A stretch of 64,000 bases of DNA from Podarcis erhardii. Lineage: Eukaryota. The notes beneath the pieces were generated by a model, which saw only the letters and a list, made by a program, of their open reading frames with translations, had not been told where the DNA came from and ran no database searches. The stretch's first letter is position 1. Every line of letters begins with the position of its first letter. The stretch lies in the NCBI GenBank assembly GCA_964252035.1, contig OZ176200.1; one strand, written 5' to 3'. This document shows positions 1 through 49,666 of the stretch, one piece after another. Both the position numbers and the translations under genes were made by a program.

Positions 1-82
1 GAGGTACTATTTCTGGGTTAGTGGAGTCTGTAACCTGAAGTGTATGTAACCTGAAGCGTATGTAACCCAAGGTACCACTGTA
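1..82. mobile_element. Tc1/mariner-type MITE, right end (truncated by window edge)
   Basis: Ends ..GGTACCACTG then TA; internal sequence nearly identical to the full copy at 29244-29469. Confidence 0.9.
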
Positions 83-2754: not shown

Positions 2755-2872
2755 CAATGAATCTCTGAGGTGGGTTAGGCTGAGAGTGGCAAGACTTACC
2801 AAGTGAACTTCATTCTTCAAGAGCTTGAGAAAGGGATTTGAACCCAGGTCTCTCTAGTCCACATTAAACACT
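2755..2872 (-). mobile_element. Degenerate tRNA-derived SINE (Squam3/MIR-like)
   Basis: Reverse-strand gtgaggtgggttaggctgagag and gatttgaacccaggtctc (B-box) motifs, resembling the + strand copy at 3425. Confidence 0.55.
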
Positions 2873-3109
2873 ATATACATTACATCTGATTTAGGCACTG
2901 TATCCTTCTGTCAAGGACATAGCAACTCTGTCTAAAAGGAAGCAATCCTGGCCCTCTAACAACATATTGTTTGCATATTTGCTCTGAAGTAAGTGTCATT
3001 GTATTCAATGGGGTCTACTGACTTGTATGTCTGCATAGAATTATACAATTAATAAAGCATATTATGTAGGACTCTGTTAACACACCACATTATTCACAGT
3101 AGTATGACC

Positions 3110-3399
3110 AGTTTTGAATCCCCGTGAAGGGGTGAGCTTCCGTTGTTCGGTCCCAGCTTCTGCCAAGCTAGCAGTTCAAAAGCACATCAAAATAGGTACC
3201 GCTCCGGCGGGAAGGTAGACGGCGTTTCCGTGTGCTGCTCTGGTTTGCCAGAAGCGGCTTAGTCATGCTGGCCACATGACCCAGAAGCTGTCTGCGGACA
3301 AACTCCAGCTCCCTCGGCCTATAGAGTGAGATGAGCTGCCAACCCCAGAGTCATCCATGACTGGACCTAACGGTCAGGGGTACCTTTACCTTTACCTTT
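3110..3399 (+). mobile_element. Sauria SINE, 5'-truncated
   Basis: B-box-like ttgaatcccc, body ggtaccgctccggcgggaagg..gtcatgctggccacatgacc, and the characteristic (ACCTTT)n tail. Confidence 0.92.
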
Positions 3400-3424
3400 T
3401 TATGGCCAGTTTACTGTCAACTTA

Positions 3425-3651
3425 CAGCCAGTGTGTTGTGTAGTGGTTAAAATAGGACTTGGGAGACCAGGGTTCAAGTTGTTACCTGGCCATGAAGCTC
3501 ACTGGGTGACCTTGGTTCAGTCACTGTCTTTCAGCCTAGCCTACCTCACAGGGCTGTTGTGAGTAGAAACTATGGGAGAATACCATGTATGCCACCTTGA
3601 GCCCCTTGGAGTAAAGGTGGGATATAAATTTAAGTGACATAAATAAATAAA
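3425..3651 (+). mobile_element. tRNA-derived SINE (Squam3-like)
   Basis: Head agccagtgtg..tagtggttaa, core ctgggtgaccttgg..agcctagcctacctcacagggctgttgtgag, (TAAA)n tail. Confidence 0.8.
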
Positions 3652-4320
3652 CTTCACATGCACAGAACAGGATTCTGTGCCAAAGTGACCCAAGTTCAGT
3701 TGTAAAAAAAAATTGAATTCTGCAGCAGCAATAAATTATGCATGTCTAGCAAATTTGCATGCACTGCTTGTTTTCCATGTTCTGATGCTTCTGGTCATGA
3801 GCATAGACTAGGAGCTGTGCAGGATGGTGAAGCTTTGCCTCCTGATGGCTAGAAATGCCATGCAGCAGCTCTCTGGCTCCTGCATCTCCTATGCTGGCCT
3901 CCTGAACCTGGCCATACCCTCACCATCACCCTGCTGTCCACACATAGTGGCCAAAGATCAGAAGAGAGGAGCCTGCTCTACACACATAGGCACCCCACCT
4001 CCATGATCTAGAACCCTGTGCTATCAGGGTTCTAAGTCCACCAGGGAGCCCCCATGCATAGAGTAGGCCCCTTTCCTGAGACCTTACCCTCAGCGCATGG
4101 ACAGCAGTTGGGGCATTCAGCCGGGATAGGGCGCAGAGTCAGAAGCATGGCCTTGATCTCCTTATGCAGCTGTAACCACGCAAGGGGTAAGTGCCCAAAC
4201 AGATCTTATATGTTGTCAAGATGCTTGTAATAAAGGTCATTCGTAAATTATAGCTGTAAGCCTTTGGGGTTCTGGGACTAAGGGGTTTTAGTTGTTGTTA
4301 GAGGTAAGTTCAGAGATAGC

Positions 4321-4346
4321 AGAGAGAGAGAGAGAGAGAGAGAGAG
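4321..4346. repeat. (GA)n microsatellite
   Basis: Direct reading. Confidence 0.95.
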
Positions 4347-4572
4347 AAGCAAATCCCTTTCAGGATGTTGATTGTTGCACCCTTATCTTCTCAGTTGCTC
4401 ATGTAACAACTGCATGAAATACAACTAGTTCTTCTTTAGCTTTTTTTTTTTTTTTAAAAAAACAATATTAATTGAATATGTGTTTGCTTTCCTTGTGGTC
4501 AGGGAGGAGAAACTTTGGAGGACTGCCAGTCCATTCATGAAGTTGCAACCTCCTCCTTTAACTTGCAGCCCC

Positions 4573-4969
4573 TGAGTCAGTCCCATGTGTTGCTTCTGGC
4601 AGGTCGATGGGAGCCTCCTTAAGCTTAGTTCAGATAGTATATTTACGTGAAGCATTGAGTCAGAAGAATCTGAGAGCAGGGCAGATCCCTACTACATGCC
4701 TCGATTGCTCGCCTGCAACCCAGGGCCACTATTTTTGGGACAGTAAAAAACCCCAAACCAATTACGTTTAAATTGTGAGTTTGGGCCTTCTTTTCTAACC
4801 GGTGATGCTTCTTCAAACTCTCCTGAGATGAGGATGGACACGTGGAGGGCAGCAGTGTTGTGAATTACCCTCATGTTATTATGTGGGGTCTTTTTGTTTC
4901 TAATGGGGGAGGGGGCAGGGGGTGAGTGGAGCTGCTGCTGAGTAGCAGATGGCAGGAAGGGTGACATCA
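4573..4969. promoter_or_regulatory. AP-1/ATF motif cluster (candidate enhancer)
   Basis: TGAGTCA at 4573 and 4656, TTACGTGA at 4643, CACGTG at 4839, TGACATCA at 4962. Confidence 0.3.
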
Positions 4970-7822
4970 TAGGCACAATTGTCCTACCCCATTATTCTTC
5001 CTGACAAGCTCCTGCCCTCCTTTTTGGTTTCCTGCTGACAGAATTTGAAATTGTGTGTGTGTGTGCTGGGAGGCAGCCAGAGGTCCTCCCAAATTCCTCC
5101 CTTTTGGGTAAATTATGTTTATCTAGTACTAGTAGTATTTTATTATCGCTTCTAAAACAGTCAGGTACTGACCATAAAGACAGGCCCTCCTCCCAATTCG
5201 CAACTGTAGGGAATGGAAAGAGTAAGAGGAGATCAGTATGGCCTATATAATTTGGGTTGGTATGTGAGACAGGAAGGTTATGTTTTTACACATGTGCGCA
5301 GGCCAGACGTGGACATGCTTTCCCAGGATCAGGTTCCTGTGAGTTCATTGTGACTTACTTGAGATTTAGGATTGCAGCCTTGGGAGTTGTCAGCTCCAGG
5401 CTCTACAAGGTCTCCTGTTTCTTTATGGTTTAAGAGAAGGAAGATAATGTGCTGTGTGTGTTGCCTCACCTCCCAGCAATTGTCATTCCAGTAATGTGAT
5501 GGGGAAAATGCATTGGGGAAATATGCCCTTCCCTGTAGCCAAGGCTGGCATCAAGACTCTGCAATCTGTTGCTCATGCCAAGGCCTCTGCATTGTGCCTG
5601 GCACCAACTTCTGGCCCTGGTCTTGCCCCCCTCCTTGCTATGGCTAACGTTTCACCTTCCCTCTCTGAATGAGCAGGTTGGGACAGGATTAGGAGCAGCA
5701 TCCTCTGCTTACCTCACCCTCTGGACCAATATGCAGGTTGAGCCCACAGAAGGAGGGCAAGTGAATGGGGCATTCGCTTCTTCTTTGGAGATCAATCGTA
5801 GCTGAGTAAGATTGTCTTCCATAAACATGGTTTTAAGAGGAGGCGGTCCCATTCAAGGAGATGGCTTGCTAAGGCCATTTTGCCCAAGGACCCCTCCATA
5901 CACGCAGTAACGATACAGGAGACTTCTCTAGTTTGGAATGTCACTCTTAGTCTGTGTCCCTTGCTACTGGGTTGGCGAATTTGCATGATCACATTTGTGG
6001 GCTGAGATCGGTTTCCTTCATTAGCAACACTAAAGGGGGGGGGGGTAGGATTCTTTTATCATGGCAAACCAGTTTATATGTAGGGATTGATTTGTTACTC
6101 TGCAGCTTGAAACGTGCTTGATGTGGAAGGTGATTTCCATGGCATTTATATTTTCATGCAAATGTGCTTAGGATCGCAACCTTTTGAATGAGGAAGAATC
6201 AAGGGGGCTCTTGAGTTAAGAAATGTTGCACATCACTGCAGTTAAGCTTGATTATTTGATTGTGGGTTTTGCTTTGATGCTACAGGCTCATTCAGCCGAT
6301 GACGGCAGCATTGTATAACCCAGGTAAGTTTGTTTAGAAGTGCATCCCTTTTCCATGCCTCTTCTGTCATTCTCACAAGTTGGGACGAGGTAGTAGGTGA
6401 TGAAGCCTGAGCTGGAGACAAGGAAGAAAGGCTTTGGCTATGACAAGTGGAAACTGCATAGGTCTGGTCAGGGAAGCATTCTGGGGGCAGAGAAAGGGTT
6501 TGGGAACCCTGTGCAAGCAGGCACTAACAGTTGAGGCTTTTAAACATTCATCCATGTCAGCCGTCACTCAACACTTTTATAGTTGAAGGAAACGCAATCC
6601 CGTTTAGCCAAAATGTATTTGAAACATCCACACCCCTTCCCGCTATTCCCCAGTTCTGAACTCAGTCCAGGCAATACCATGTTTACTCGATGTGGCTTGC
6701 TTCTGTGCTGCCAGTGCTTGTCTGGGATTTCTATTGCCTGAAACCTTATAACTTTAATAAGATATAAACCGTGTCGCATCCATCTGCCGTTGCTCAGCAA
6801 CCTGTCAGTAATGCCCAAAACAAAGCTCCCCATGTGGAAGGAACACTAAATCCTACTGTGGGATAATTCTGCTTCCAAAGCTGTTGTTTCCTTCGCTGCT
6901 AATAGCCCTGTCCTGGTAGCGAATCCTCCCACCTGTGGCAGCAGTGCACACTGCGCATGAGTGACTCTCCTGTCACCTTTGCCCCTGTGGCCAGGGCTGG
7001 AGGGATTACAGTACTTTGCTTGCCATGCTGGATGTGCTTAGGTTATGTCACAAGAATAAATGTCTGCTGTTATCTTTAAAAAACGCAGGGCACTTGTATT
7101 AAATTTTCCAATACAAGCCAGGAAATATATTGTTGTTGTTGTTTGTTTGTTTGTTTTTTTAAGTCAGAAAGGCCAATGAAGTGTATCCTTTGGTGCTTCT
7201 CAGCTAGATCAATAACTCAATTTCTCAGTATTCCTCTCAGGTGCAAAATGATCGTTGCAACACTGCATGTCACATGCATTTTCTTAGCAGGTTATTCATG
7301 CTGAAGCCTTGGAACTGGTGTTAATGTGCATGTTGCAGGGGAAATTAAAATGGGAACGGGCCACTCAGTATCTTTTGGATTCTGATCACAGGGTTTTGGA
7401 ATATGTACTAGGGAAAATGGCAGGCAGTGAGTATAAAAGATGTGGCGTGAGTATATATGTGTGAAGGTGCAGGTGAAGGCAGGATCAGCCAAAGAACCAG
7501 GCTCCCTTCTTATGAGAACCTCTCCGTTAGCGCATAAAAAGGGGAATTCTCTCCCGCTCCTTTTCCAGCCGTAATGTCCCACAGTCCTTCTGCTTCTTAA
7601 CTCCCACCCCTCTTGAGTTTCAGATACTACAGACAAAACCAAATATCCATTTCCACTGGAAATATTTAGTGAGGCATGACATGCTTGGCATTTATTTATG
7701 CTGCTCTCTTATAGTGGTTTGTTTTGACAGTCATAATTGAGGGCTAAATTAGCATCAATAGCATCCCTCAAGTTTCATGCTGGCAGCCAGACACGAGTCA
7801 ATCAGCAAGGGATGTGTTGAAA

Positions 7823-7835
7823 GTTGCCAGGCAAC
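7823..7835. promoter_or_regulatory. RFX X-box palindrome
   Basis: GTTGCCAGGCAAC fits the RFX palindromic consensus; related sites at 6789, 8412, 15921 and 24515. Function untested. Confidence 0.4.
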
Positions 7836-8006
7836 TACACATGGTTAAACAGGTCCAGTGAACTCAAAACAACTTGGAATAGAATCTGTTTTCTCTGTGG
7901 ATTTGCAAGTTGGTTTTGCACACTCTTCTATGTCCAGAGGAAGGTGTGTGGGATGTAGCTTTTTGTTCATCTTGTTTAGGCTTGCATGAGCTTCTCAACT
8001 GGCTAA

Positions 8007-8140
8007 CATAGAGTCGTAGACTTGGAAGGTTCCCCAAGGGCCATCTAGTTCAACCCCCTGCTATGCAGGAATCTCAACTAGATTGTACATGACAGATGGC
8101 CATCCAACCTCTGCTTCGAAACCTCCAAGGAAGGAGACTG
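8007..8140 (-). mobile_element. CR1 LINE 3' end fragment
   Basis: Reverse complement of the CR1 3' terminus: catagagtcgtagacttggaagg..catctagttcaacccc..atggccatccaacctctgct. Confidence 0.85.
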
Positions 8141-8689
8141 CAATTAAACAAAAATCTGATGTGACCTTCCCTAGCTTTTTGAGGATGCAGTCTTTTGTTC
8201 CCCACCCCAGATTTGTTAGTATAAAGGGAGAAATGTGAGAGATTGGTGTGGCATAAAAAGGGTCAGCCACAAGGGCTCCATAGGCTTCATCCAACTGAGT
8301 TAAACCAGACCTAGTGATATTGATGGATCTAATATAGCCATGTCCATCCATTTAGTGGGCCTACTTGCAGGACTCTCACAAAAGTGGTCTCATATAGGAA
8401 CGGGTGGTACGGTTCCCATGGCAATTGCACACCTGACGTGTGCTGCATGGCTGGACTCTTTCTGCCATCTGGGCTAGTGGTAGTCTGCATGGGCACTGAC
8501 ATGCCAGACACTTGAATACCAGATGTGCACAGAAGCAGCATTAGCTTCTATCCACAGAGAGGTTTTCTTATTTTCATGCATCTAATTAACTAGGCTAGTG
8601 CAAAGGAATTTGAAGGTAAAAAGGAAGTGAAAGGAAATTTGGAGTTATTAGCATTACAGCAAGCCCTAAATGCTGCAGTCAGAAGTCTC

Positions 8690-8765
8690 TCCCATCCTGA
8701 CCCAGAAATAGAGCCTGGAAACTTCTGCAAGTAAACTAGATGCTCTACCACTGAGCCATGACACT
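8690..8765 (-). mobile_element. tRNA-derived SINE head (Squam2-like fragment)
   Basis: tgctctaccactgagc is the reverse complement of the A-box gctcagtggtagagca; preceded by gagcctggaaacttctgca. Confidence 0.6.
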
Positions 8766-9330
8766 TCCCCATATTGTGACTGTATGTTTCCCCACCTTTT
8801 TTTGCTAACAGCAGCTCTGGAAGGGGTTTGGATAGAAGCTGTGGGGATGGGGGAGAGAAAGGGTTAGGGACCTCCCCCCCCCCACTTTGCACAGCAGTTC
8901 TATGGTTTTATACAAAGAAATTTACTGATGCAATCACCGATTGGCTTCATGTCTATTTGAGTGCATAGGCTTGTGCCAGAGATTTAGTAACTCCCTCTCC
9001 TCAGGGCCTGAGTTAGGAATCTGAAACAAAGAATTCTCAGCAAACTACAATTCCCGGCATTCTTTAGGAGAAGGTATGTGCTTTTAGTTTTGTTACCAGG
9101 GCATGTATGCTTTCCACAGCTCTTCCTCGGTCTGATACACTGAACAGCAGGATGGCTGCATATGAAAGCGAACTTGATTTTAAGTGTCTTTCAAAGCTGA
9201 CCAAACACATACTCAGAGACTATCTGTAATGTAATGGAAAGAGCTGTTTAGTCCTTTCCCCCATTTGGCTAGCACCCTCTCTCTTTCTATCCGTCTGTCT
9301 GTCTGTCTCTCTGGCTTTGCTTCACCACAG

Positions 9331-9555
9331 CTGCTGTTCGCTGACAGCAGAATGATAGATGTGCTTTGCGCCAGAGGGAGGAAGGCCGCCAGCTCAGAAG
9401 GCCGGCGTATGCCACCCATCAGCCTATTCAGTGGATGCACTGAGCCGTGGCACTGTGAGGATTTTATCGGCCTTTAATGCATTAACCTTTCATTAGGCAC
9501 GGCAGCCCCTGACTGTGCCTCGCACTCTCCGCCTCTGCTCCTGCCATGGCCCTAG
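9331..9555 (+). other. Candidate alternative exon with several uORFs and a terminal strong-Kozak ATG
   Basis: About 45-nt CT-rich tract ending ttcaccacAG (9329-9330); GCCATGG with ATG at 9546; donor CTAG|GTatgc after 9555. Confidence 0.4.
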
Positions 9556-10035
9556 GTATGCCATGGAGGCTTGTCATCGGAGGGAAACCCCTTTTGTCCC
9601 TACTCAGGGATCAAATGATACATTCTCACAAACCCGGGGAACCTCATGCCTTTTTTTCTGCACATGTACAAAGTTCCGGACTTGGGTCTGCTTCCTTGTG
9701 CTGGTGTAAAGAAAATTGTTTACCTTCCCACCACAGCTCCCTCGGCCTGAAACAAGATGAGTGCCACACCCCATAGACGCCTTTGAATGGACTTAATCAT
9801 CCACCGGTCCTTCACCCCTTTTTTTTTTTTTTTACTTTATCTTAGAGAAAATTGTACTAGAGAAATCGTCCCCCGACCTTCTTCTCTGCTCTAATCTGCA
9901 CGCACCCCACCCCCACATGGCATTTTGTACCATGGAGAAATCCTGTTAGAATCTGAGAGAATACAACTGATTACAGGCCAGATGGCAAAGAACAGCTTAT
10001 TCTGATTCTGGGAATGGGAGTAGATGTGTTTCCTG

Positions 10036-11719: not shown

Positions 11720-11858
11720 GTAGAAGCAGAAGACCACCAAGATGTGGTGGTCTATGACCAGAGCACACGGGATGCCAATGGACTGGCGTCTGACAGTTTT
11801 CTCTCCATCCTCCTAGGCAAGCTGGACAGCTGCTTCCACAATGTCTCCATCCTCACAG
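11720..11858 (+). CDS. DUSP8: DUSP8 internal coding exon (second half of rhodanese/CH2 domain; equivalent to human exon 3)
   Basis: Acceptor ctcttgcAG|G, donor ACAG|GTagga; 139 nt, phase 0 to phase 1. Translates VEAEDHQDVVVYDQSTRDANGLASDSFLSILLGKLDSCFHNVSILT(G), recognisably the DUSP8 segment QDVVVYDQSTRDA..DSFLSILL.KLD.CF. Confidence 0.97.
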
Positions 11859-21107: not shown

Positions 21108-22884
21108 ACCAGCGCACTTACTAACAGTAGAACCATTAGCATTATCATGTCACACTAGCTTGAAAGATGTTCCAAATAGTGTGTGTGCTGTTGCCCACAG
21201 TAGTACCTGACCCTAATGATAAATGAAACTAACAACACATGGTGTATCTCTATAGGACTTAGTTATACTTCCTCACAGTTGGTCAGTGCTAAGTCAGATG
21301 TATTCACCTCAGGTGGTGGCCCAGAAGGCCTGTTATTTAAAAACAAACAAACAAACACAAACAAACAAACAAACAAACCCTAATTTCCAACTAAAGGCCT
21401 CTTTCTGTGTTATCCTGAAGCAAGCAAACCAGATCCTAAGCTTTGCCCTGAATATACAAGACAAGGTTGTGGGTGCTGAATCTGATTCTAGCAGAGGGGA
21501 AGTTACAGATTGGGCCCTGGCTTGGTGGAGACCAAAGGACTTGCTGAAAGTAAGACTCTGCTCTCAGTTTCCCATAGCTCTGAAGTAGCTCTTGCTTGAA
21601 AATTAGGGAGCATAATTTGGTGGTAGCCTACTTAGGACTAAAATGCACCAATCCTACCTGGTTCTGCATCACAGGACTGATGAGGTGGTTCTGACGGTTG
21701 GTTTTTCAAGTGCAGCATCCTTTATGCTTTCATAGAAGCAGCCTGGGAGTGTGGAATAGCCACATCTTTCTCATGGGAGGGTTCACTGCAGGCACATGAG
21801 GAGTAACCTAGGGCAATTCATGTGAGAAGCCTAAGGCCATTCACAAGAGAAGTGGATGTGTGCACAGCCTAGAAAAATAAAACAGTTAACACTAAGAGTT
21901 GTGTGGAATTAGACTTTGAAGTAAAATAAATTAGAGGGCTAAATTCAGCCTGCATTTGAGCGCAGGATGAATAGTTTACAACAGTTCAAGAATTAGGTTA
22001 TAAAGAATTCAGTATTCTGCAACTGAATGAGCTACTTCTGAAGCTCTGACTGAGTCCCTCCCACACCCACACTCTTGGTCACCAAGCTGTGCTAAAGCCT
22101 TTTGTACCTTTTCTCAAGCCAGTAGCTTTTCATCTGGCCCTGGTGTACATGTGAGCTCATCAGCCATCTTCTTCCCCACTCTAGAGCTTGTACCAGTTCT
22201 GTGAAGAATGTTTAGATTTTTCCATCTCTCTTTTTTTCTAAATTTAGAGGACCCATTTAACACTCATGATTTGGAAAGAATGTGGCATGGTAATAATTGA
22301 TGAGTGATCTCTCCATCCCCCAGCTCTTCAGCAAACACATTGCCTTTGACAGGTCTGGCCATACTCCCAGACCACTTGCAAACCTGCAGTGCTATGGAGA
22401 GCCTGTGTCTTTCAGAGGCATATCATACATGCCCATTTCTCCTCCACTCCTATTTCCCTAAACTCAGTAGATCCGTTTATTTTCTTTACCTCCTGTGGGA
22501 TATATATATCAGGAAGGGTTGAAAGCACATTAGCAGCTGTGAAGAAATACTTCTATATTCACCTGACAAGTCAGGAGCCAATATTTGTGTCGGCCCATTT
22601 AATTTCCCCCCCATTTGTTTATGTGGGGTTGTTTAATGGTGCCTGGTAAATGAAGCAAAACAGGGCCCCAATATTTACAAGTATGTGCAAAGGAAATGGT
22701 CAAACCAGTAGCATAGACGTATATAGTTTATTTGAACTTCCTAAATGGGCCTATCGATGTCCTTCTCTGGAGTCTATTAAAAAAGGTAAGTATCATAGAG
22801 GTAAGATCTAAAAGTTTAGTAATGGGTTAGAAATTGGCTAAGCACTAAAAAGTAAAACAGAAGAGAAGGGTCAGATGCTTAGAG

Positions 22885-26505: not shown

Positions 26506-27052
26506 TCCTTCACTCTTGTACAAAGTGGCCCCAGTGGAAGTGTAATCGCCAGCCAGAATCTTAGATGTTTCTGAGTGCTTCATTCAGAGAGAGAGACTGA
26601 GCCAGGTCACATGGCTGAGTGAATTGTATTCCAAGCCTGTGTTCTATAACATTCTGTTTAGCAATGTCATCATCAGAAGACTTGTTTTCCTGATTCTATA
26701 ATTATTCTTTGGAATGCACTCCCACCCACTGTCTTCCCTCCCCCCACACTGCCAAGACAGCTTTTGTAACAATTGGACCAAGAGCAAGAAACTCATTGTG
26801 TGGGGCTGCTGGGGGTGGGCGGGGAGAGGAGATGCATTCAGCAAATTTCTACATACAAAAATGGCAAAAGTACTGTGTCACATCATAACTCAATGCTTGC
26901 AAATAGAAAGGAGGTGTGTGTATAACATAAGAGCCTGTTCCCAGTTAATATTTATTTCCTTTTAAGAAAACTGATTTTATTATTATTTTTCTGACAGAGC
27001 TACCTAAAGAAGTCATGCAATGGAAAGGTGGGAAGTTTCTATTGTTGTAGAT

Positions 27053-27168: not shown

Positions 27169-28805
27169 TTGTAGATGTTCTTTCTCATCAGCTGGAGCTT
27201 TTGATAAATCAAATGCTGAAGTACAAAGTGCTTTCAGTATTGCAGACACTTCTTGATTGCTTTCACAAATTGTGTTGTGCCAGTCAGTGTTGACGTTGCA
27301 GGGAGCAGCTGCTGTAATGTTTGCACGGGCCCTGGTTGTCCGCATGCTAGGAGGACTTGCACTGCAAATGTGCAACCAAAGATGCTTATTTTTTTTAAGG
27401 TGCCCGCAGGATTCACCCAAGTGCTAAAGAGAGAGCATAGGAAGTCCTGACAAGAAGCAGCGTCTACTGTCCAAGGGGCTTGCTCAGCTGCGACAAGCCA
27501 AGGAGTAAATTAAATAACATTAAAAGATAAGAAACTGAGCTTGTACATCTCAGTGTAGTGACCTCTCCATTGATAAATGGTATATTTATGGTACCTCAGT
27601 TCTAAACCAGGTCTTTAAACACATTATCAACCTTTTGCTTGATTGTTGGGAGGTGGAGGTTTTTTTTTAATTGGAGGAAGGTCCAATTAAAAATGGGAGG
27701 AAGGTCAATTTTGAGCAGTTCAACTGGGCAGAGAATACATACATATTGACCTGAAAATGATAGACTATAGTATGTTATAAAATATGACCTGATTTTTCAT
27801 TAAGAAACTCCAACCGTAATGCAGAGGGGACATGACCGCATAGGGTACTTACTCCCCCTCCTAAAAATAGTTTCAGGAAGCAGTGTTCAGAAATAGAGTA
27901 AATAACAGGTTTGCTTGGCTAAACCTACTTTACCCAGTGAAAATGTTACGCAGTTTCAGGAAACAGTTCTAAATGCTAGGAAAGCAAATGTGATTGTCCT
28001 CTAATGTGCTTCTTCCCCAGTTTTGCTGCCGTACACTGGCATGATACATTGACTGGGGGTCAAGTGATATGTTCTGAGGGCTAACAGGAGCAGCATTCAG
28101 CGTACTGCCTCTGTTTAAACACTGCCCCTCTTCTCCAGTGTAGTTTCATTGTACTTCTCTAAACTCCAACCCACATATGATAATAATCAACCCCATATTT
28201 GTTACAATAACAAGTCTCATTAGAACACTGGTTCCAATCATGGAGCGGCGGGTGGGAGGGAGGGTTTATTTAATGCTGGTGACTTCATCTGGAGTGATGT
28301 CACTGTTAAGGAAAAACACTGAACTCCCATGAAACAGTTCAGCCTTGGATTCCTTGCCCTTGTAAATCGTTGGCTTTAAAGAGACAAAGCATCCCATCCA
28401 GCACATCTAATCCTGGATGGTTTTCCATAGAACTAGGAACCATTCAGTCCATGAGCAGACTTAGAGAGCATCAGGGCATAAAGGCAATTAAAGAATACTG
28501 AGTATATGCTTGTCCAGTGTCCTTGTCACAGCAGAACAAACATTAGGCCCCACTGCCTTATCAAGCTCTCCTCTGTCACCAGTGTGGAGTACCCTTACAG
28601 TCCACACAAGTTCAGGAACTAGGAGCCAGGCCTCAATATCAGCTTCCTTCACTTCTCCCTTTATGATTCTTGCTCTGGTGTCAAAAAGCATGAAATGTAA
28701 AGGAGAGCAGAGCAGAGTGCAAAGGCCATAGAAGCTGGGTGCAGAAAGGGTGGCAGTCTGTGGAGCAGGAGATTCGGATATGTTCAGGCCAACGGGTTAG
28801 GAAAC

Positions 28806-29469: not shown

Positions 29470-30496
29470 TACTTGTGTGCATTCTGTTATATGCATTGTG
29501 TGGTTGGTGTTGGCATGAAAAGGTGTTGGGAGGCAAAGTCTAGTTGAGCCCTGGTTCCAGCTTAACGAATGGGCAAATGTTGTGGTGCAGATTTGCTCTT
29601 AAAAACAATGCTTTCATGATGGAGCAGGAGCTGGGCAATGGCCAGAAATAAGGACTGCTTGGGACTCCTGTTCAGAACAGTCTTTAATGAGATACATAGT
29701 TTTCTCCTGGGTGTGGAGGTAGTGGAGAGGTGAAGTTCAAAGAGTTTCAGGAAGAGGATGTAATGTACTGCACTGCGACCCCTGATCACAAGGGAGATGC
29801 AATGGATTGTGCAGGAAACTGCCAGCTCAGACGTTAGCTGCTCAGGCTAGTACTCTGCCCACTATACCACACTTCCTTCTGCTTTCTGTTGGTGCTTTGG
29901 GACCAAGCTTGTATCAAATGGATGAGCAGGGCTGCACAGCCTTCTAAAGCTTCAGTTTGCTGTGCAGATATATTGACGTGCAAAAACAAAAGGCACCAGA
30001 GCTGCTTCTTTTACCCCTGCCACCTGCCATTCACTAGGGTGGTTGGAGGAAGCGGGGAAAGGGATGTTGTCCCTTTAAGCAGCTGAGCGAACCATATGCC
30101 AGTAGCGTAGCCCTTGAGTTAAACTGCATGTCTGTGTGCTGAGTAAGGAATGCGGTTGCATGCCTGACCCGTTAGCTATGACTGCTCCTTAGTGGATCAG
30201 CACGGCTGTTGCTCATGTGCTGATCTCATTCAGCCTCACTGGAGCTGGCGCTGCACATACACAAGGAGTGGAGAGAGGGGGAGAATCGTTCTGCTGAGAA
30301 GGAGCAGGAGTATTCCTGTCCTGCTCCCTCCCTCCCTCCCCTTTTTTATTTCTCCAAGAAGCTGGATCTAGGGGTGTTTCGGGCTCCCCTACTTTTTTGG
30401 GGAAATAAGGAGGCTTCCACCCACCCACCTCTGGCAACTGTTGTTTTGCGAGGGCAGGAGGTAGCTCTTGGAGAGAGACGCAGCGCAGCTGCCTGG

Positions 30497-30614
30497 ATGC
30501 CTTTGGATGTTATGATTGCTCCCTCTGAGGACCAGTTCTGGCCAGACATGCACAAAGAGCAGATGAAGCTGAAAATCAGGGTGAGACGGATGAAGGAGAG
30601 CAGGGAGATGCGAG
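30497..30614 (+). CDS. DUSP8: Candidate alternative DUSP8 coding exon giving a new 39-aa N-terminus (MPLDVMIAPSEDQFWPDMHKEQMKLKIRVRRMKESREMR)
   Basis: ATG at 30497; 118 nt (39 codons + 1) ending at GAG|GTtggt. The phase-1 donor joins exon 44741 in frame (..EMR-G-GFATF..). Protein-like composition. No transcript evidence available here. Confidence 0.7.
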
Positions 30615-33600
30615 GTTGGTTCCCTGGATTTCCCATCCCTTTTAGATGGGGGGTGTGCATGAGAAGTGAATGGGGATGGGACTGGAGTGTGCTGGGGGGG
30701 GGTGCGGGGGGGATGGAGGAATCAATTCTGTTGCCTGAACCATGTCTCCTGCCTCCTGAGTGTGCCAAGTGGGGAGGAGATTGGCAGCTGGCATCTTGCC
30801 ATCACAGGACTGGGACAAGTTTAAAATTCTGGCGGCAGGAGGGGGAGAATGCCCATCATTTCTCCAGCCTTCGCAGATGCAGGACACAACAGGCAGCAAT
30901 CCTAAGCATGCGCATGAAAATCTCATTCGTGAGACTTACTTCTGAGTCAACATGTTCAGAATTGGGCTGTTGGAATGTGACAGAGTAACACTCCCCCTTC
31001 CCCAGAATAATCAGAAAATGTGCTGCTCTTTCAGTGTGGGTCTTCTCTCTCTCTCTCTCTGTCTGCTGCAAGAAGATGGGCATTGGGTTATGCTTGCCTT
31101 GAGTCCCTCTGTGTTCCTGCATGTGCAGTGCTGCAGCACTCATCTGAAAAAAGAGTTGCTTCCCCTTTAACAGGGTCTGGATTTTTTTAAAAAGGATGGG
31201 GGGGGGTCCTTAATTTCACAATGAACTGGGATCGTTAAAACTGGAATATAATGGGAAACTCAGAGGAGTGAGGCAGATTCTTCCTTTCTTATGTAACTCA
31301 CCACATTCTCCAGGGCAGAAGGGTAGGGAGCTGTGGAAATTTCCTGGGGACATCTCCATGCATGAGAAAGCATCTTGCATTCACTGCTACCTTCTTTAGA
31401 GGTCACTTTCTATCCAGTGGATGTGCAGATGGAAGGAAAGGAAGGAAAGGAGGAATTACCTTCTAGAAAGGCAGAATAAGAGAAGAGGCATCGAGGAAGG
31501 TGGGGGCACTATGCTGTCCATAGCTTTAGATCTTGTGCATTTGCTTTGCTGCTCAATATGCCTGACTGCATTTCTCTACTGAGAATGACTCCTTTATTGA
31601 AAAGGCATCCATAGTGGTTTATTACTCGCAGGGCTAGCCCGAAAGGTGAGAAGAGAAATGAAAAGCAGCTTTAAAAAAGTAGAATGACCTACTTTTACCA
31701 AACGATGGAACCATGAAACTTTCCCACAGCCCTTGCACTCTTTACAAAATCAGAATTCTCCTGCAGTGCTTGGAAGCCCTTTTGTGTCATGAGATGCATA
31801 GCCCAGCGATTGTGTCATTAGTAATAAGTCATTTATGGAAATGACACATTTTTCTTTACTTAGAACCAGTAGAGCTGGTCCTGGTGAGGCACATTTACCA
31901 GAGGAAAATCTAGACCAGCAACTCAGGAGGGCTGATTCTTTCAAGGGTGTTATTGCCCAATGCTTTTAAAAAAATATATATTGGTGTTAATGGTTGCTTT
32001 CCTATTTATGTAAGGTCTTGCACCTTGGAGAAATATAACAGTTGGCAAAGATTCAAAAAATGAAGCATGACTTACTTGAGGACAGGGAATGTGGAGTTTC
32101 CCCCCACTCTCCCTTATGGATTCTTCTTTCTGTTGTACACGCAACCCAAAACTGCCTGCCCAACAGATGTTAGTTAGCTCAGTAAAAGCAAGAAGCATAC
32201 TTACTTCTATCCTCTGATACTAGTATAGACAATCAGAACTGGCTATATGCTGCATATAACATGCCTAAAACATTTGTGTGTGTGACAAGGGGGAGCATAG
32301 AATGGGTAGAAGTGTGCCTAGAGGTTTGGGTCTTTGTATGGTGGTGAACTAAGGTTCCTGTTCCTTCAGCTAGGAAGAATTTAGATGTGATAGTCTTTCA
32401 TCTGACAAATGATTGAGCTTCCTCACACAATGGCAGTGTCAAAATTGTCTGAATTGGGGGGAACAGAAAGCAACCACCCCAGAGTTAAAGATACCTGATG
32501 ATGATGATGATGATGGCACCAGCAAAAGTGCCACCAGCCATGATGACAAAGGCATGAAAACAGAGATTACTTGATGCAGCACAGGAAGATGGTGAGAGTC
32601 AATATAGCAGGGGGCTGTGAGGGGAACAGCTGCAAAGACCAACCGAACCCTTTCACTGCAGTAATAGAATTCAAATAGGAACTTGATGAGGTAAGATCCT
32701 AAAGCCATTTAAAATGAGGGATCAGGGGAGGCAGTCTCCAGAGACCTAAGAGAGAGTGTCAGTTCTTTTTCCCCCCTTTTCAGAAAGCTGCTTTAACTGC
32801 CATTTTAGAAGCCGGTGTTTGGCTCTGGCGAAACAGCAAATGTTGCCCTTGCAAAAGGGGCCAGTGAGGCTGCATTGAAAAAATGTGCTGAACGTTCCAT
32901 CCGCTTTGATACATACGAAAAGGGGCTTTATGTGGAATTGGCCAAGGTCCAGCAATGGGTGAGATAATCGAGCCGATATAAGGAGTAGAACACCATTTGT
33001 TACTTGAGGAAGGAAGTCAGAACTGACTTTTGCTAATCCTAGAAGGGGTGGGGGTGGGGAATGCAGCCAAGTGTCCTTTCCTCATGAATTTCAGAGAATA
33101 TTTTGCTGTTTCAGGTCTTGATATATCCCACCCACACTCTTCAGTTATGACAGCTCTCCCTTACTTAGCCTCATAAGAACAGAGGCCAAATTCCCATAGC
33201 AATATAGTGTGATCTACCTCTGTCACTTGCTTGTTCTGCTGTTTCTCCATACTCAAAAATGCATACCTGTGCATGGGAGTGAAGGTGTGAAGTAGCCCTG
33301 GAAGTGGTGTCACTGCTCTCCTCCTACTTATTTAGCTCTGTTGAGAGAGTAACAATGCTCCAGTATGACAGCTAAGCAGGGTTTTGTATGTGACCAAAAC
33401 ATATAGCTCATGCTGGAGGACTCTGCTTTGTGTGGGAACAAAAGAACCAAAATCAGGGCTGTTGTCTTGCACGTAAAGGCAAGACAGCAGAGCAGACCAT
33501 CTAGCTGCAAAAAGGAAGTAATGGTTGTGAAAGCCAAGGAATTTTCTATGGCAGGACTGAGTAAGATTTTCAAGTGCTGTGATTTCATCATTGGCAAGGC

Positions 33601-33919
33601 TTGTAATGGAAGCCGTCCTTAAGCAAAAGTACCCCCCGCCCCCGCCACAGCCACCGCACACCCCTAATGTAAGAGATCGAAGCTAGAATGTAGGAGACTG
33701 GGCTTTTCTCAGACATTTACAGGAGGAAACACAGAATGAAGGTGTTTTGATACAGGCACACAGTTCCCCTTTTGTGGCTTATCTGTTCCTGACACTTATT
33801 TACCTGGTCATCTCTTCCATACTTAAGGCACTGAGTTAACTGCTGTTGAATAAAGTGTGTGGTGAGTTAATAATAATAATAATATCAGCACTACCACTGG
33901 CTTGGTAATGGATGATTTT

Positions 33920-35195
33920 CACATATGGGGAGAAGTGAAAATGACATTGAACCGTATATCTTGAATTCAGTAAGCCTTTTGACAAAGTCCCCCATGATAT
34001 TATTGGGGAGAAGCTGGTAATATAAGGGCTGGACAAGGTCACCGTTAGGTGGATTTGTAGCTAACTGAACCCCAAGAGTGCTCACTAATGGTTCCTCATC
34101 ATCTTGGAAAAAAGGGACAAGTGGGATGCTGCAGGGTTCTGTCCTAGGCCCATTGTTGTTCAGCATCTTTATAAATAACTTGGATGAATGAACTAAGGGG
34201 ATGCTCATGAAATTTGCAGACAACGCCAAGCTGGGAGGGGTAGCCAATGCCTTGGAAGACAGAATCAGGATTCAAAATGACCTTAATAAATTGGGAAACT
34301 GGGCCAAAACTAACTAAATGAATTCCAATAGGGAGAAATATCAGGTTCTATACTTAGGCAGGAAGAACCAGCTGCACAAATATAAGATGCTGGGCACCTA
34401 GATTGCCAGTAGTACATGTAAAAAGGATCTAGGGGTCTTAGTAGATCACAGTTTGAACATGAATCAACAGTGTGATGCAGCAACAAAAAAGGCTAATGCT
34501 CTTCTATGCTGTGTCAACAGAAGTACAGTGGTACCTCCGGTTGCGAACGGGATCCGTTCCGGAGCTCTGGTCGCATCCTGAGGAATTTCCAAAAGGAGGT
34601 GATGCTTCTGCGCATGCACGTGACACGGTTTAACTCTTCTGTGCATGTGTGCAGTACATAGAGCACTTGCGTGTGGGGAGAAACCCTGCAAAATATTTCT
34701 GGGTTTGCCACATACATATCCTAAAGGATACATAACCAGAGGTGAACGCAAGTAGAGGTACCACTGTATAGTGTTCCAATCAAGGGAAGTTATAGTCCCA
34801 CTCTATTCTGCCTTTGGCAGACCACACTTGCAGTACAGTTCTGGGCACTACAATTTAAGAAGGATATTGAGGAACACGTGCAGAGAAGGGTAACCAAGAT
34901 GATAAAGAGTGTGGAAACCAAACCTTATGAGGAATAGTTGTGGGAATTGGATATGTTTAGCCTGGAAAAGAGGAGACTAAGAGAAGATATAATGGCCATC
35001 TTCAAATATCTAAAGGGCTGTCACATAAAATATGGAACAAGCTTGTCTTCTCCTGCTCTGGAGTGTAGAACCCGAACCAATGGCTTCAAGTTAAAAGAAA
35101 GGAGATTCCAACTAAACCTCAGGAAGAACTTTCCAACAGTAAGAGCTGTTTGACAGTGGAATAGACTTCCTCAGGTGGTGGTGGACTCTCCATTT
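33920..35195 (+). mobile_element. Decayed CR1 LINE ORF2 (reverse transcriptase and C-terminus)
   Basis: Degenerate RT motifs: ..FSKPFDKVPHD (about 33965-34000), QGSVLGPLLFSIFINNLD (about 34130-34185), KFADNAKL (about 34210-34235); many stops and frameshifts. Confidence 0.93.
34526..34766. mobile_element. Tc1/mariner (Tigger-like) MITE nested in the CR1
   Basis: TIRs CAGTGGTACCTC / GAGGTACCACTG with TA duplicated at 34524-34525 and 34767-34768; removing it restores CR1 ..cagaagTAtagtgttcc.. . Confidence 0.93.
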
Positions 35196-44740: not shown

Positions 44741-44907
44741 GGGGCTTTGCCACCTTCTCATCTTGCTTCCCAGGACTCTGCGAAGGGAAACCTACTGCTA
44801 TCCTGCCAATGAGCATCTCCCAGCCATGCATGCCAGTGGCCAATGTTGGCCCAACTCGCATCTTGCCTCATCTCTACCTAGGCTCCCAGAAAGATGTCTT
44901 AAATAAG
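44741..44907 (+). CDS. DUSP8: DUSP8 coding exon (end of rhodanese domain, linker, start of catalytic domain)
   Basis: Acceptor ctttctccAG, donor AAG|GTacat; 167 nt, phase 1 to 0. Translates (G)GFATFSSCFPGLCEGKPTAILPMSISQPCMPVANVGPTRILPHLYLGSQKDVLNK. Confidence 0.98.
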
Positions 44908-46469: not shown

Positions 46470-46629
46470 GACCTGATGACCCAGAATGGGATAAGCTATG
46501 TCCTCAACGCCAGCAACTCTTGTCCCAAGCCAGATTTCATATGTGACAGTCACTTCATGCGCATTCCAGTCAATGACAATTACTGTGAGAAGCTTCTGCC
46601 CTGGCTGGACAAGTCCATTGAATTCATTG
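46470..46629 (+). CDS. DUSP8: DUSP8 coding exon (catalytic domain)
   Basis: (CT)n pyrimidine tract plus cAG, donor TTG|GTaaga; 160 nt. Translates DLMTQNGISYVLNASNSCPKPDFICDSHFMRIPVNDNYCEKLLPWLDKSIEFI(D); residues match DUSP8 rather than DUSP16. Confidence 0.98.
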
Positions 46630-47593: not shown

Positions 47594-47717
47594 ACAAGGC
47601 CAAGGTGTCCAGCTGCCAGGTGATCGTTCACTGCCTGGCAGGGATCTCCCGATCGGCCACCATTGCCATTGCATACATCATGAAGACCATGGGGATGTCT
47701 TCAGATGATGCCTACAG
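47594..47717 (+). CDS. DUSP8: DUSP8 coding exon containing the HCX5R active site
   Basis: Acceptor ctgctgcAG, donor CAG|GTaagt; 124 nt. Translates (D)KAKVSSCQVIVHCLAGISRSATIAIAYIMKTMGMSSDDAY(R). Confidence 0.99.
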
Positions 47718-48552: not shown

Positions 48553-49666
48553 GTTTGTAAAAGACCGGCGTCCCTCCATCTCACCCAACTTCAACTTCCT
48601 GGGTCAGCTCCTAGAGTATGAGAGAAGCCTGAAGCGGCTCAAGGCTCTGAAGGCCCAAGGGGAGAAGGGCGAAGGAGAATCCCAGCAAGACCAGCCAGAA
48701 GCCCCTGAAGGCTGCAGGCACCAGATTCTGTCTACCTCAGAAAAGGCTGAGGAGCTATTCAGAAGCACAACCTCGGAGACCTCCTCACTTGACTCCGAGA
48801 AGCCAGCGGGAGTCTCCAAGGTTGTCTCGCCTACAGCACTGCAACAAGGGCTCCGTGGCCTCCACTTGTCTTCGGAGCGCATCCAAGACACCAACCGGCT
48901 GAAGCGTTCCTTCTCCCTGGACATCAAGTCAGCCTACACCCCTAGCCGGAGGCAGCAGGACCCTCCAGGTCCAACAGAGGCAGGAGAAACCCCCAAGCTG
49001 TGCAAGCTGGACAGCCCATCAGGTCCCAACGGCACATGCCAGTTCTCCCCTGTCCCAGACAGCCCGGACTGGCCCAGCGGGCCCGACTTCCTCCTCGAGG
49101 CCAAAGTACGGCAGAGACGGAAGCACAGGCACCAAGCCGGCTCCCCTGCCCACGGGCTGAGCCTTAACTTCAGTGGGGTGTGCGCCATGCACAAGAGCGC
49201 CAGCGTGGAGGACAGCCTCAAGCAGACGCTTCGGGCGGGCCTCCCCGGTGTGGGGCAGCAGCCGACCGCCACCCCGGCCCCCACCGGCACTTGGGGGGTG
49301 CACTTGGAGTCCCCCAGCACCCCTTCCTCTGAGAACCCCTGGTACTTCAGCACAGACTCGGCGGCGGGCAGCAAAGGCAGCGGGAGCGGGACTCTGTTTG
49401 CCGGCGCCGCCACCTACTCCTCCTTCAGCTGCAGCACAATCCAGGCGAGCTGCGAGATCAGGCTGAGGGACAAGCAGCGGGGCGAGCCGCGGGACGTGCG
49501 GCACAGCTGGCACGAGGACACCGCGGCCGAGAAGCAGTTCAAGCGCAGGAGCTGCCAGATGGAGTTCGAGGAGACCCTGTCGGAGAGCAGGTCTCGGGAA
49601 GACCTGGGCAAAATCAGCAAACAGTCTAGCTTTTCGGGCAGCATGGAAATCATTGAGGTGTCCTGA
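48553..49666 (+). CDS. DUSP8: DUSP8 last coding exon (end of catalytic domain and long C-terminal tail)
   Basis: Acceptor ccccaacAG|G; runs FVKDRRPSISPNFNFLGQLLEYERSL...LQQGLRGLHLSSERIQDTNRLKRSFSLDIKSAY...FKRRSCQMEFEE...SFSGSMEIIEVS to TGA at 49664-49666, matching the conserved DUSP8 C-terminal motifs. Confidence 0.98.

What the first reader, a model, noticed from the sequence alone, without database searches (positions are those of the whole stretch)
30359..30614. Hidden intronic exon predicts a DUSP8 isoform with a new N-terminus and no MAPK-docking domain
Seen: in the middle of the 32.9-kb intron, ATG 30497 opens 39 codons (MPLDVMIAPSEDQFWPDMHKEQMKLKIRVRRMKESREMR) plus one base, ending at GAG|GTtggt. 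This phase-1 donor fits the phase-1 acceptor at 44741, so the spliced CDS (118+167+160+124+1114 = 1683 nt) is open and gives 560 aa. Established: in DUSP8/DUSP16-type MKPs the N-terminal rhodanese domain carries the kinase-interaction motif, encoded here by upstream exons this isoform would omit. Inference: a catalytically intact but docking-less phosphatase. Its basic stretch KLKIRVRRMK could be an alternative docking, NLS or membrane-binding motif, changing substrate range or location. I have an unverified recollection of similar MPLDV..KIRVRR N-termini in predicted fish Dusp8 models, which would imply deep conservation.
Basis: partly seen in the sequence, partly recalled or inferred. Interest (0 to 1): 0.85.

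Follow-up and report, generated by a model that had tools for sequence, protein, structure and literature searches.

The report
Known short DUSP8 isoform's first exon
The intronic ATG exon is real and has been kept from sharks to birds; it starts a DUSP8 phosphatase lacking its N-terminal rhodanese domain, but this isoform is already annotated in closely related lizards and was described in chicken in 2025, so it is not a new discovery.

Summary
ATG 30497 opens 39 codons plus one base, with donor GAG|GTTGGT at 30614/30615. Spliced to 44741 and the three downstream exons, it gives an open 1683-nt, 560-aa CDS.

It is not chance. The same leader (MPLDV…KLKIRVRR…R|GGFATF) starts NCBI "DUSP8 isoform X2" models in lizards, snakes, turtles, many birds, a caecilian, coelacanth, paddlefish, a shark and teleosts. 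The window's product differs from Podarcis muralis X2 at 4 of 560 residues, and the leader is identical.

In five fetched loci the exon lies in the same intron. dN/dS between lizard and turtle or duck is 0.07-0.22. Conservation drops to background just after the donor. A single-copy non-coding block about 250-450 bp upstream is 86-93% conserved across sauropsids, and its 54-nt core is also found in a teleost.

A 2025 chicken paper showed an alternative promoter in this intron driving a rhodanese-less DUSP8 transcript. The exon is therefore real and ancient, but already known.

"Docking-less" is overstated. The catalytic-domain FNFL motif is retained, and in the paralogue MKP7 this motif, not the rhodanese domain, binds JNK1. 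The function of the disordered, basic leader is untested. Its status in mammals could not be checked.

The parts
30497..30614 (+). First coding exon of the short (isoform X2-type) DUSP8 transcript: ATG, 39 codons and one base (phase 1). The invariant core KLKIRVRR is at 30566-30589.
   Evidence: Identical to the Podarcis muralis and P. raffonei X2 N-termini. dN/dS is 0.07-0.22 against turtle and duck.
30615..30620 (+). 5' splice donor GTTGGT. It is weak (T at +3). Other lizards have GTTGGT, turtle and duck GTTTGT, and Salminus GTAAGT.
   Evidence: Five-species identity falls from about 0.9 to about 0.4 within 50 nt after it.
30435..30496 (+). Conserved proximal 5' leader. It holds a CAGCTG E-box and an ATG context tgcctggATGcc that is identical from teleost to lizard. 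A pyrimidine tract plus AG at 30438-30452 is a possible acceptor. The stretch is non-coding, because species differ here by 2- and 4-nt indels.
30054..30256 (+). Single-copy conserved non-coding block, a putative core promoter or start of the 5' leader of the short transcript. Its 54-nt core at 30126-30179 includes GGAATG. It is not a CpG island (observed/expected 0.3).
   Evidence: It is 86-93% identical across lizards, turtle and duck. The core is 83% identical in Salminus about 450 bp upstream of that fish's ATG. The duck model P0123 includes this stretch in its mRNA.
28170..28400 (+). Upstream conserved non-coding block. Through the duck locus it is the orthologue of the chicken GW1 region that CRISPRa used to switch on the short DUSP8 transcript. 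It is a likely enhancer or alternative TSS region.
   Evidence: The chicken gRNAs match duck L003 at 21749-21908 with 0-1 mismatch. That duck stretch aligns to window 28170-28326. The gRNA sequences come from the supplement of PMC12536144.
44741..44907 (+). Shared exon (phase-1 acceptor) that begins the common part GGFATFSS...
46470..46629 (+). Shared exon, the first part of the DSPc catalytic domain. The general-acid Asp in VND is at 46569-46577.
47594..47717 (+). Shared exon with the active-site loop HCLAGISRS at 47629-47655.
48553..49666 (+). Last exon, stop codon included. The FNFL docking motif is at 48590-48601, followed by the long C-terminal tail.
11720..11858 (+). Canonical coding exon 2, the second half of the rhodanese domain. 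The short isoform omits it. Coding exon 1, which carries the KIM (LVKRRL), lies upstream of the window.

Best explanation
Window 30497-30614 is the first coding exon of an ancient alternative transcription unit inside the long DUSP8 intron of a Podarcis-like lacertid. Transcription starts from an internal, non-CpG-island promoter. The start site is somewhere between about 28.3 and 30.2 kb and cannot be fixed from sequence alone. The exon's phase-1 donor joins the phase-1 acceptor at 44741. This gives a 560-aa DUSP8 in which the rhodanese (kinase-binding) domain is replaced by a 39-residue leader.

Shown here: the exon, its splice compatibility, its orthology to annotated isoform X2 models, protein-level purifying selection, and conserved flanking non-coding elements.

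Inferred from the literature: the product is an active phosphatase that can still engage JNK. It keeps the active site and the FNFL motif, which in the paralogue MKP7 is sufficient for JNK1 binding and dephosphorylation. What it mainly loses is the high-affinity D-site contact made by the rhodanese domain. The internal promoter is probably tissue-specific, as in chicken muscle.

Inferred, weak: the leader is predicted to be disordered. It has an acidic/hydrophobic half and an invariant basic half with alternating residues (KLKIRVRR). It probably acts as a short linear motif for a partner or for localisation.
For: The exon, its phase and the open CDS are confirmed. The product has 4 mismatches in 560 residues to Podarcis muralis X2, XP_028590284.2, and the leader is identical. 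The same leader starts X2-type models from shark to birds and teleost models. The exon lies in the orthologous intron in five fetched loci. dN/dS is 0.07-0.22 between lizard and turtle or duck. Salminus uses different Arg codons for the same KIRVRR. Conservation is sharply bounded by the donor, and the upstream non-coding blocks are conserved and single-copy. Pfam finds DSPc only in X2 and Rhodanese plus DSPc in X1. HCLAGISRS, VND and FNFL are present. In chicken the intron carries promoter chromatin marks, CRISPRa there raises the short transcript, and the short form exceeds the long form in muscle (PMC12536144). The gRNA targets map through duck to the window's 28.2-28.4 kb block. The MKP7 catalytic domain alone binds and dephosphorylates JNK1 through FNFL (PMC4802042).
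Against: These tools give no transcript, junction-read or peptide evidence for this lizard itself. The RefSeq X2 entries are computed models. I could not confirm by sequence that chicken XP_004941503.2 starts with this leader; that rests on position and on duck and other bird models. The donor is weak (GTTGGT) and the ATG context is weak (T at -3). If the start site is near 30.1 kb, several upstream ATGs lie in the leader, so translation could be inefficient. The JNK inference comes from the paralogue MKP7, not from DUSP8. AF2 gave no confident structure for the leader (pLDDT below 50), and the alignment behind it was shallow (24 sequences).
Confidence: 0.88

Rival explanations
1. The short isoform has truly lost MAPK targeting. 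Without the rhodanese/KIM domain it would act on other substrates, or only as a weak or buffering phosphatase, unless the basic leader supplies a new docking site.
For: The KIM (LVKRRL, X1 residues 54-59) lies in omitted exons. Deleting the kinase-binding domain of MKP5 raises the Km for p38alpha 280-fold (PMC4802042). The chicken authors call the product an atypical DUSP.
Against: For MKP7, the closest paralogue, the catalytic domain alone has the same kcat and Km for JNK1. The kinase-binding domain does not bind JNK1, and its removal does not drastically affect activity on p38alpha either. The FNFL motif is retained here.
Confidence: 0.2
2. The exon is an in-frame cassette included between the rhodanese and catalytic exons. 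The Willisornis 689-aa model and the Thunnus model show this layout. On this reading it is not a first coding exon.
For: The frame is open for 41 codons upstream of the ATG in the window. An AG at 30451-30452 would give a 162-nt in-frame exon. Two database models show the leader downstream of the rhodanese domain.
Against: The 44 nt before the ATG differ between species by 2- and 4-nt indels, while the 117 coding nt have none in sauropsids. A frame through that stretch is therefore not conserved. The window has GAG, a poor acceptor. About 45 models from many species start at the ATG. M1, P2 and D4 are nearly invariant.
Confidence: 0.03
3. The transcript exists but acts only as RNA or by promoter interference, and the leader is not translated into a functional protein.
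For: The Kozak context is weak. Upstream ATGs occur in the conserved leader. Nucleotide conservation in the second half of the exon is also very high at silent sites among sauropsids.
Against: dN/dS is 0.07-0.22. Variable columns are 12, 2 and 14 at codon positions 1, 2 and 3. The teleost shows synonymous Arg codon swaps in the invariant motif. The only indel in the coding part is an in-frame 3-codon deletion in Salminus.
Confidence: 0.04
4. The exon is a chance ORF in a slightly GC-richer intronic patch that happens to match phase 1.
For: The ORF continues for 204 codons through the donor into the intron. Local GC is the highest in the intron.
Against: All of the conservation, orthology and annotation evidence above argues against it.
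Confidence: 0.01

Closest known systems
RefSeq 'dual specificity protein phosphatase 8 isoform X2' of lacertids: Podarcis muralis XP_028590284.2, P. raffonei XP_053250225.1, Lacerta agilis XP_033011010.1, Zootoca vivipara XP_060132318.1
   Same: The architecture and length are the same (558-563 aa). The 39-aa leader is identical in the two Podarcis species. The P. muralis protein differs from the window's product at 4 of 560 residues.
   Different: Nothing of substance differs. The window is another individual or species of the same group. These entries are computed models whose supporting evidence I could not inspect.
Chicken short DUSP8 transcript XM_004941446.5 / XP_004941503.2, driven by an alternative promoter in intron 3 (Kim et al. 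2025, PMC12536144)
   Same: It has an internal promoter in the same intron and a product lacking the rhodanese domain. The gRNA target region maps through duck to a conserved block 2.1-2.3 kb upstream of the window's ATG.
   Different: The paper does not describe the leader peptide, its deep conservation or its motifs. I could not verify the chicken protein's N-terminal sequence directly.
MKP7/DUSP16 catalytic-domain-only constructs (Liu et al. 2016, PMC4802042)
   Same: These have a catalytic domain with the FNFL motif and no kinase-binding domain. They are sufficient for JNK1 binding and inactivation. The window's short isoform keeps FNFL.
   Different: They are engineered truncations of a paralogue. 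They lack the conserved 39-aa leader and the DUSP8 C-terminal tail.
Natural N-terminally altered MKP isoforms, e.g. the DUSP4/MKP-2 short variant lacking the KIM. This is recalled from memory and was not checked here.
   Same: An MKP gene produces a KIM-less, catalytically intact isoform with a different 5' end.
   Different: It is a different gene. I know of no evidence for an equally ancient, conserved replacement leader.

Membership tests
DUSP8 isoform X2 (rhodanese-less short isoform) | N-terminal leader orthologous to annotated X2 N-termini | tested here: met
   The leader is 39 of 39 identical to Podarcis muralis and P. raffonei X2. It is 82-90% identical to other sauropsids and 67-72% to caecilian, coelacanth, paddlefish and shark.
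DUSP8 isoform X2 (rhodanese-less short isoform) | Phase-compatible splice into the exon starting GGFATF, giving an open CDS | tested here: met
   The CDS is 1683 nt and 560 aa with no internal stop. It is 91.8% identical to Elgaria X2.
DUSP8 isoform X2 (rhodanese-less short isoform) | Exon lies in the intron between canonical coding exons 2 and 3 | tested here: met
   This holds in the window and in Elgaria, Varanus, Trachemys and Anas. In Salminus the exon lies 7 kb upstream of the shared exon.
DUSP8 isoform X2 (rhodanese-less short isoform) | DSPc domain present and Rhodanese domain absent | tested here: met
   Pfam on the near-identical P0194 finds DSPc at 84-214 only. X1 (P0199) has Rhodanese at 13-130 and DSPc. 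HCLAGISRS and VND are in the window.
DUSP8 isoform X2 (rhodanese-less short isoform) | Transcript and junction evidence in this species | not testable with these tools
   No RNA-seq or CAGE access is available. There is only indirect support from congeners' RefSeq models and chicken experiments.
JNK/p38-specific MKP subgroup (DUSP8, DUSP10, DUSP16) | FXF (FNFL) docking motif in the catalytic domain | tested here: met
   FNFL is at residues 203-206 of the short isoform, window 48590-48601. The motif is defined in PMC4802042.
Atypical DUSPs (gene group without a rhodanese domain) | A gene that encodes only a DSP catalytic domain | tested here: not met
   The architecture of this isoform resembles that group. 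The gene, however, is the classical MKP DUSP8, and it also encodes the rhodanese-containing X1.
MAPK D-motif / KIM in the leader | Conserved match to a D-motif or reverse D-motif consensus | tested here: inconclusive
   No conserved match was found to five ELM-style patterns, which I wrote from memory. Only the loose pattern hydrophobic-x-x-[RK][RK]-hydrophobic (IRVRRM) is conserved in all species. The canonical KIM LVKRRL also fits that pattern.

The most novel reading that the evidence does not exclude
The 39-residue leader may be a gnathostome-old short linear motif. It is disordered, with an acidic/hydrophobic half and an invariant strand-like basic core, KLKIRVRR. On this reading it gives the rhodanese-less DUSP8 its own partner or location, such as the MAPK common-docking groove, a JNK scaffold, importin or a membrane. 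The isoform would then be a functionally distinct, promoter-switched phosphatase rather than a mere truncation. The unit may be absent from mammals, which would explain why the MKP literature ignores it. No identifiably mammalian sequence was among the 27 profile hits, but that is weak evidence.
Probability: 0.3. Interest if true: 0.55.

Novelty: already known. Interest (0 to 1): 0.27.

Why it matters
For annotation the result is ordinary. The exon belongs to an isoform already modelled in congeners and in many other vertebrates, and it has been studied at transcript level in chicken. Two things are worth keeping. First, the leader peptide and its promoter block are conserved over roughly 430-450 million years. 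Second, the papers I searched, including two MKP/DUSP reviews (PMC13147768 and PMC3594966), do not discuss the leader or any DUSP8 isoform. A conserved internal promoter that swaps the kinase-binding domain for a basic linear motif could be a general way to retune JNK versus p38 control in muscle and brain. In chicken this promoter region carries the strongest GWAS signal for meat nucleotide content.

Tried and rejected
- Looking up X2 proteins with the look-up of encoding contigs failed, because only the longest product per gene is on record. I used X1 or sole products instead.
- The region search with the Rhea leader returned only 13 candidates and missed known fish and coelacanth models, so it says little about absence. 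The profile search of all representatives was more useful.
- Origin of the leader by duplication of the KIM exon is rejected. BLASTP finds no similarity to X1 residues 1-130.
- The leader matches no Pfam family and no solved structure (best E 0.57).
- The Rfam scan of 29800-30800 gave only far sub-threshold miRNA-like hits on a poorly conserved hairpin at 30255-30355. I dismissed these.
- AF2 of residues 1-200 gave pLDDT below 50 for residues 1-74, so there is no structural lead for the leader.
- The region is not a CpG-island promoter (observed/expected 0.3 or less).
- E-box density is not clearly above the window background. The muscle-promoter reading rests only on positional conservation and on the chicken data.
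- The upstream in-frame ATG used by the duck 664-aa model is not conserved as coding. In the window it is GTG in another frame with a stop at 30371.
- The mammalian status of the exon could not be tested with the collections available.
- The earlier-findings look-up returned only this finding itself and an unrelated note on the same window.

Full report
**Observation.** ATG at 30497 opens 39 codons, followed by one extra base and the donor GAG|GTTGGT at 30614/30615. A good acceptor, a pyrimidine tract plus cag|GGGGCTTTGCC, sits at 44741. I located the remaining exons by AG/GT boundaries and frame: 44741-44907, 46470-46629, 47594-47717 and 48553-49666. With the leader exon they give 1683 nt and an uninterrupted 560-aa product. 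The canonical upstream coding exon in the window is 11720-11858 (donor ACAG|GTAGGA, phase 1). The intron holding the new exon is therefore 11859-44740, 32.9 kb. Canonical coding exon 1, which carries the kinase interaction motif LVKRRL, lies upstream of the window.

**Identity of the locus.** The last exon is 98% identical to Podarcis lilfordi DUSP8, and the next hits are other squamates. The window is therefore DUSP8 of a lacertid lizard.

**Is the exon real?** Many proteins returned lack the rhodanese Pfam domain, measure about 550-570 aa and are named "isoform X2". Their N-termini carry the same leader joined to GGFATFSS:
- Lizards, snake and turtle: Elgaria, Varanus, Candoia and Trachemys.
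- Birds: ratites, ducks, raptors and passerines.
- More distant groups: the caecilian Rhinatrema, Latimeria, Polyodon and, from an internal Met, the shark Pristiophorus.

In a 15-sequence alignment of these leaders, M18, K24, L25, K26, R28, V29, R30, R31, R36 and R39 are invariant. Cluster look-ups show dozens more bird X2 models. They also show lacertid X2 models of 558-563 aa from Podarcis muralis, P. raffonei, Lacerta agilis and Zootoca vivipara. The window's spliced product differs from P. muralis XP_028590284.2 at 4 of 560 positions, and the 39-residue leader is identical.

A profile of the leader searched against 1.84 billion representatives gave 27 hits. Those that could be named are teleost DUSP8 models or intron read-through ORFs, from Salminus, Sinocyclocheilus, Austrofundulus, Aldrovandia and Thunnus. 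No hit was identifiably mammalian. That is weak evidence, because alternative isoforms usually cluster under the canonical protein.

**Genomic conservation.** I fetched five DUSP8 loci: Elgaria (L001), Trachemys (L002), Anas (L003), Salminus (L004) and Varanus (L005). In the four sauropsids the leader exon lies in the intron between canonical coding exons 2 and 3, 5.7-18 kb upstream of the shared acceptor. In Salminus it lies 7 kb upstream of the shared exon.

In a five-way alignment, identity to the window is about 0.9 across the coding part and drops to about 0.4 within 50 nt after the donor. Several features point to selection on the protein:
- dN/dS between lizards and turtle or duck is 0.07-0.22.
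- Variable columns number 12, 2 and 14 at codon positions 1, 2 and 3.
- Salminus encodes the invariant KIRVRR with different Arg codons.
- The only coding indel is an in-frame 3-codon deletion in Salminus.

By contrast, the 44 nt just upstream of the ATG differ between species by 2- and 4-nt indels. This places the start of coding at this ATG. It also argues against a conserved in-frame cassette, which is the layout in the Willisornis and Thunnus models. The duck 664-aa model starts at an upstream ATG, but in the window the equivalent codon is GTG, in another frame, with a stop before the leader.

**Promoter context.** A single-copy non-coding block at 30054-30256 is 86-93% identical among lizards, turtle and duck, as conserved as the exon itself. 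Its 54-nt core (30126-30179, containing GGAATG) is 83% identical in Salminus about 450 bp upstream of that fish's ATG. The ATG context tgcctggATGcc is identical from teleost to lizard. The region is not a CpG island.

Further conserved blocks lie at 26600-26713, 28170-28400 and 31780-31934.

Kim et al. 2025 (PMC12536144) reported a region in intron 3 of chicken DUSP8 with DNase, H3K4me3 and H3K27ac marks in muscle. They showed that dCas9-VPR aimed at it raises a short transcript whose product lacks the rhodanese domain. They also found the short form more abundant than the long form in muscle. Their gRNAs match the duck locus at 21749-21908 with 0-1 mismatch. That duck stretch aligns with the window's 28170-28326 block. 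The window therefore contains the orthologue of the published alternative-promoter region.

The exact start site cannot be read from sequence. The duck model shows that transcripts cover the 30.19 kb-equivalent stretch contiguously. The conserved pyrimidine tract and AG at 30438-30452 would also allow a short non-coding exon near 28.3 kb.

**How it most likely works.** Shown: an internal transcription unit yields a DUSP8 with an intact catalytic domain. HCLAGISRS is at 47629-47655 and the general-acid Asp at 46569-46577, and Pfam finds DSPc only. The rhodanese domain is replaced by a 39-residue leader.

Inferred: the product is not simply docking-less. It keeps FNFL (48590-48601). For the closest paralogue MKP7/DUSP16, Liu et al. 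2016 (PMC4802042) reported three relevant results:
- The catalytic domain alone binds JNK1 through 285-FNFL-288 with unchanged kcat and Km.
- The kinase-binding domain does not bind JNK1.
- Removing the kinase-binding domain does not drastically affect activity on p38alpha.

For MKP5, in contrast, deleting the kinase-binding domain raises the Km for p38alpha 280-fold. The most likely consequence of the isoform switch is therefore retained JNK-directed activity, with altered affinity or selectivity for p38 and altered regulation.

The leader has no Pfam or PDB relative and no similarity to the omitted N-terminus. AF2 predicts it to be disordered (pLDDT below 50 for residues 1-74, shallow alignment). 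It is bipartite: net charge is -4 in the first 22 residues and +6 in the last 17. The invariant QMKLKIRVR has a strand-type hydrophobic moment of 1.32, against 0.09 for a helix. It fits no conserved D-motif pattern that I could write down. Only the loose pattern IRVRRM is shared with the canonical KIM LVKRRL, and RRMK is a weak NLS-like match. A short linear motif for a partner or for localisation is the best guess, but it is untested.

**Comparison with what is known, and novelty.** The isoform is already in RefSeq for congeners and for many vertebrates, and its promoter has been studied in chicken. The finding is therefore already known. In the library searched, the chicken paper is the only paper found that deals with a short or rhodanese-less DUSP8 isoform. 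A text search of two MKP/DUSP reviews found no discussion of DUSP8 isoforms. None of these papers describes the leader peptide, its conservation from shark to bird, or the teleost-to-lizard promoter core. These are modest additions to what is known.

**Verdict.** It is wrong that the exon is hidden or new, and "docking-less" is overstated. Interest is low to moderate.

Noticed in passing
window 30054-30256 (core 30126-30179): A single-copy non-coding block is as conserved as the exon, at 86-93% across lizard, turtle and duck. Its 54-nt core, containing GGAATG, is also found about 450 bp upstream of the leader ATG in the teleost Salminus (L004 9548-9601).
   Followed up: partly
window 28170-28400; L003 21746-21926: A conserved block holds TTTATTTAATGCTGGTGAC.TCATCT..GTGATGTCAC. 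Through the duck locus it is the orthologue of the chicken GW1 CRISPRa target region of PMC12536144.
   Followed up: partly
window 26600-26713 and 31780-31934: Two further intronic blocks are 77-81% identical to turtle and duck. One lies 3.8 kb upstream and the other 1.2 kb downstream of the leader exon. Their function is unknown.
   Followed up: no
window 30438-30452: A pyrimidine tract plus AG (TGTTGTTTTGC[C/T]AG|G) is conserved in four species but reads GAG in the window. It may be the acceptor of a 5'UTR intron from an upstream non-coding exon.
   Followed up: partly
window 30485-30502 and the equivalent sites in L001-L005: The start-codon context tgcctggATGcc has T at -3, a weak Kozak context. 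It is identical from teleost to lizard. Several upstream ATGs lie in the conserved leader (30119, 30150, 30160, 30178, 30215), which hints at translational control.
   Followed up: no
window 30575-30586: Inside the exon, the codons for R-V-R read AGG|GTGAGA. This is a strong-looking cryptic donor in phase 0 that would frameshift if used. It is conserved only in the lizards; turtle and duck have GTGCGG.
   Followed up: no
L004 (Salminus) 1-10000: No rhodanese-coding exons were found within 10 kb upstream of the leader exon. The only annotated product (527 aa) is the short form with a 36-residue leader. This paralogue may have lost the long form, or its upstream exons may lie farther away.
   Followed up: no
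P0030 (turkey), P0005 (Rhineura X5), P0066 (Parus X2), P0110 (Gekko), P0120 (shark X2): Other database models join different, non-conserved N-termini to the same GGFATF exon. At least the turkey model looks like an upstream extension into the intron rather than a spliced exon.
   Followed up: no
window 33891-34247 (-): An antisense ORF fragment containing GPRTEPC.IPL looks like the C-terminal part of a CR1-type LINE ORF2. This was recognised from memory, not tested. The Varanus intron (L005 22734-24275) also holds an RVT_1 ORF.
   Followed up: no
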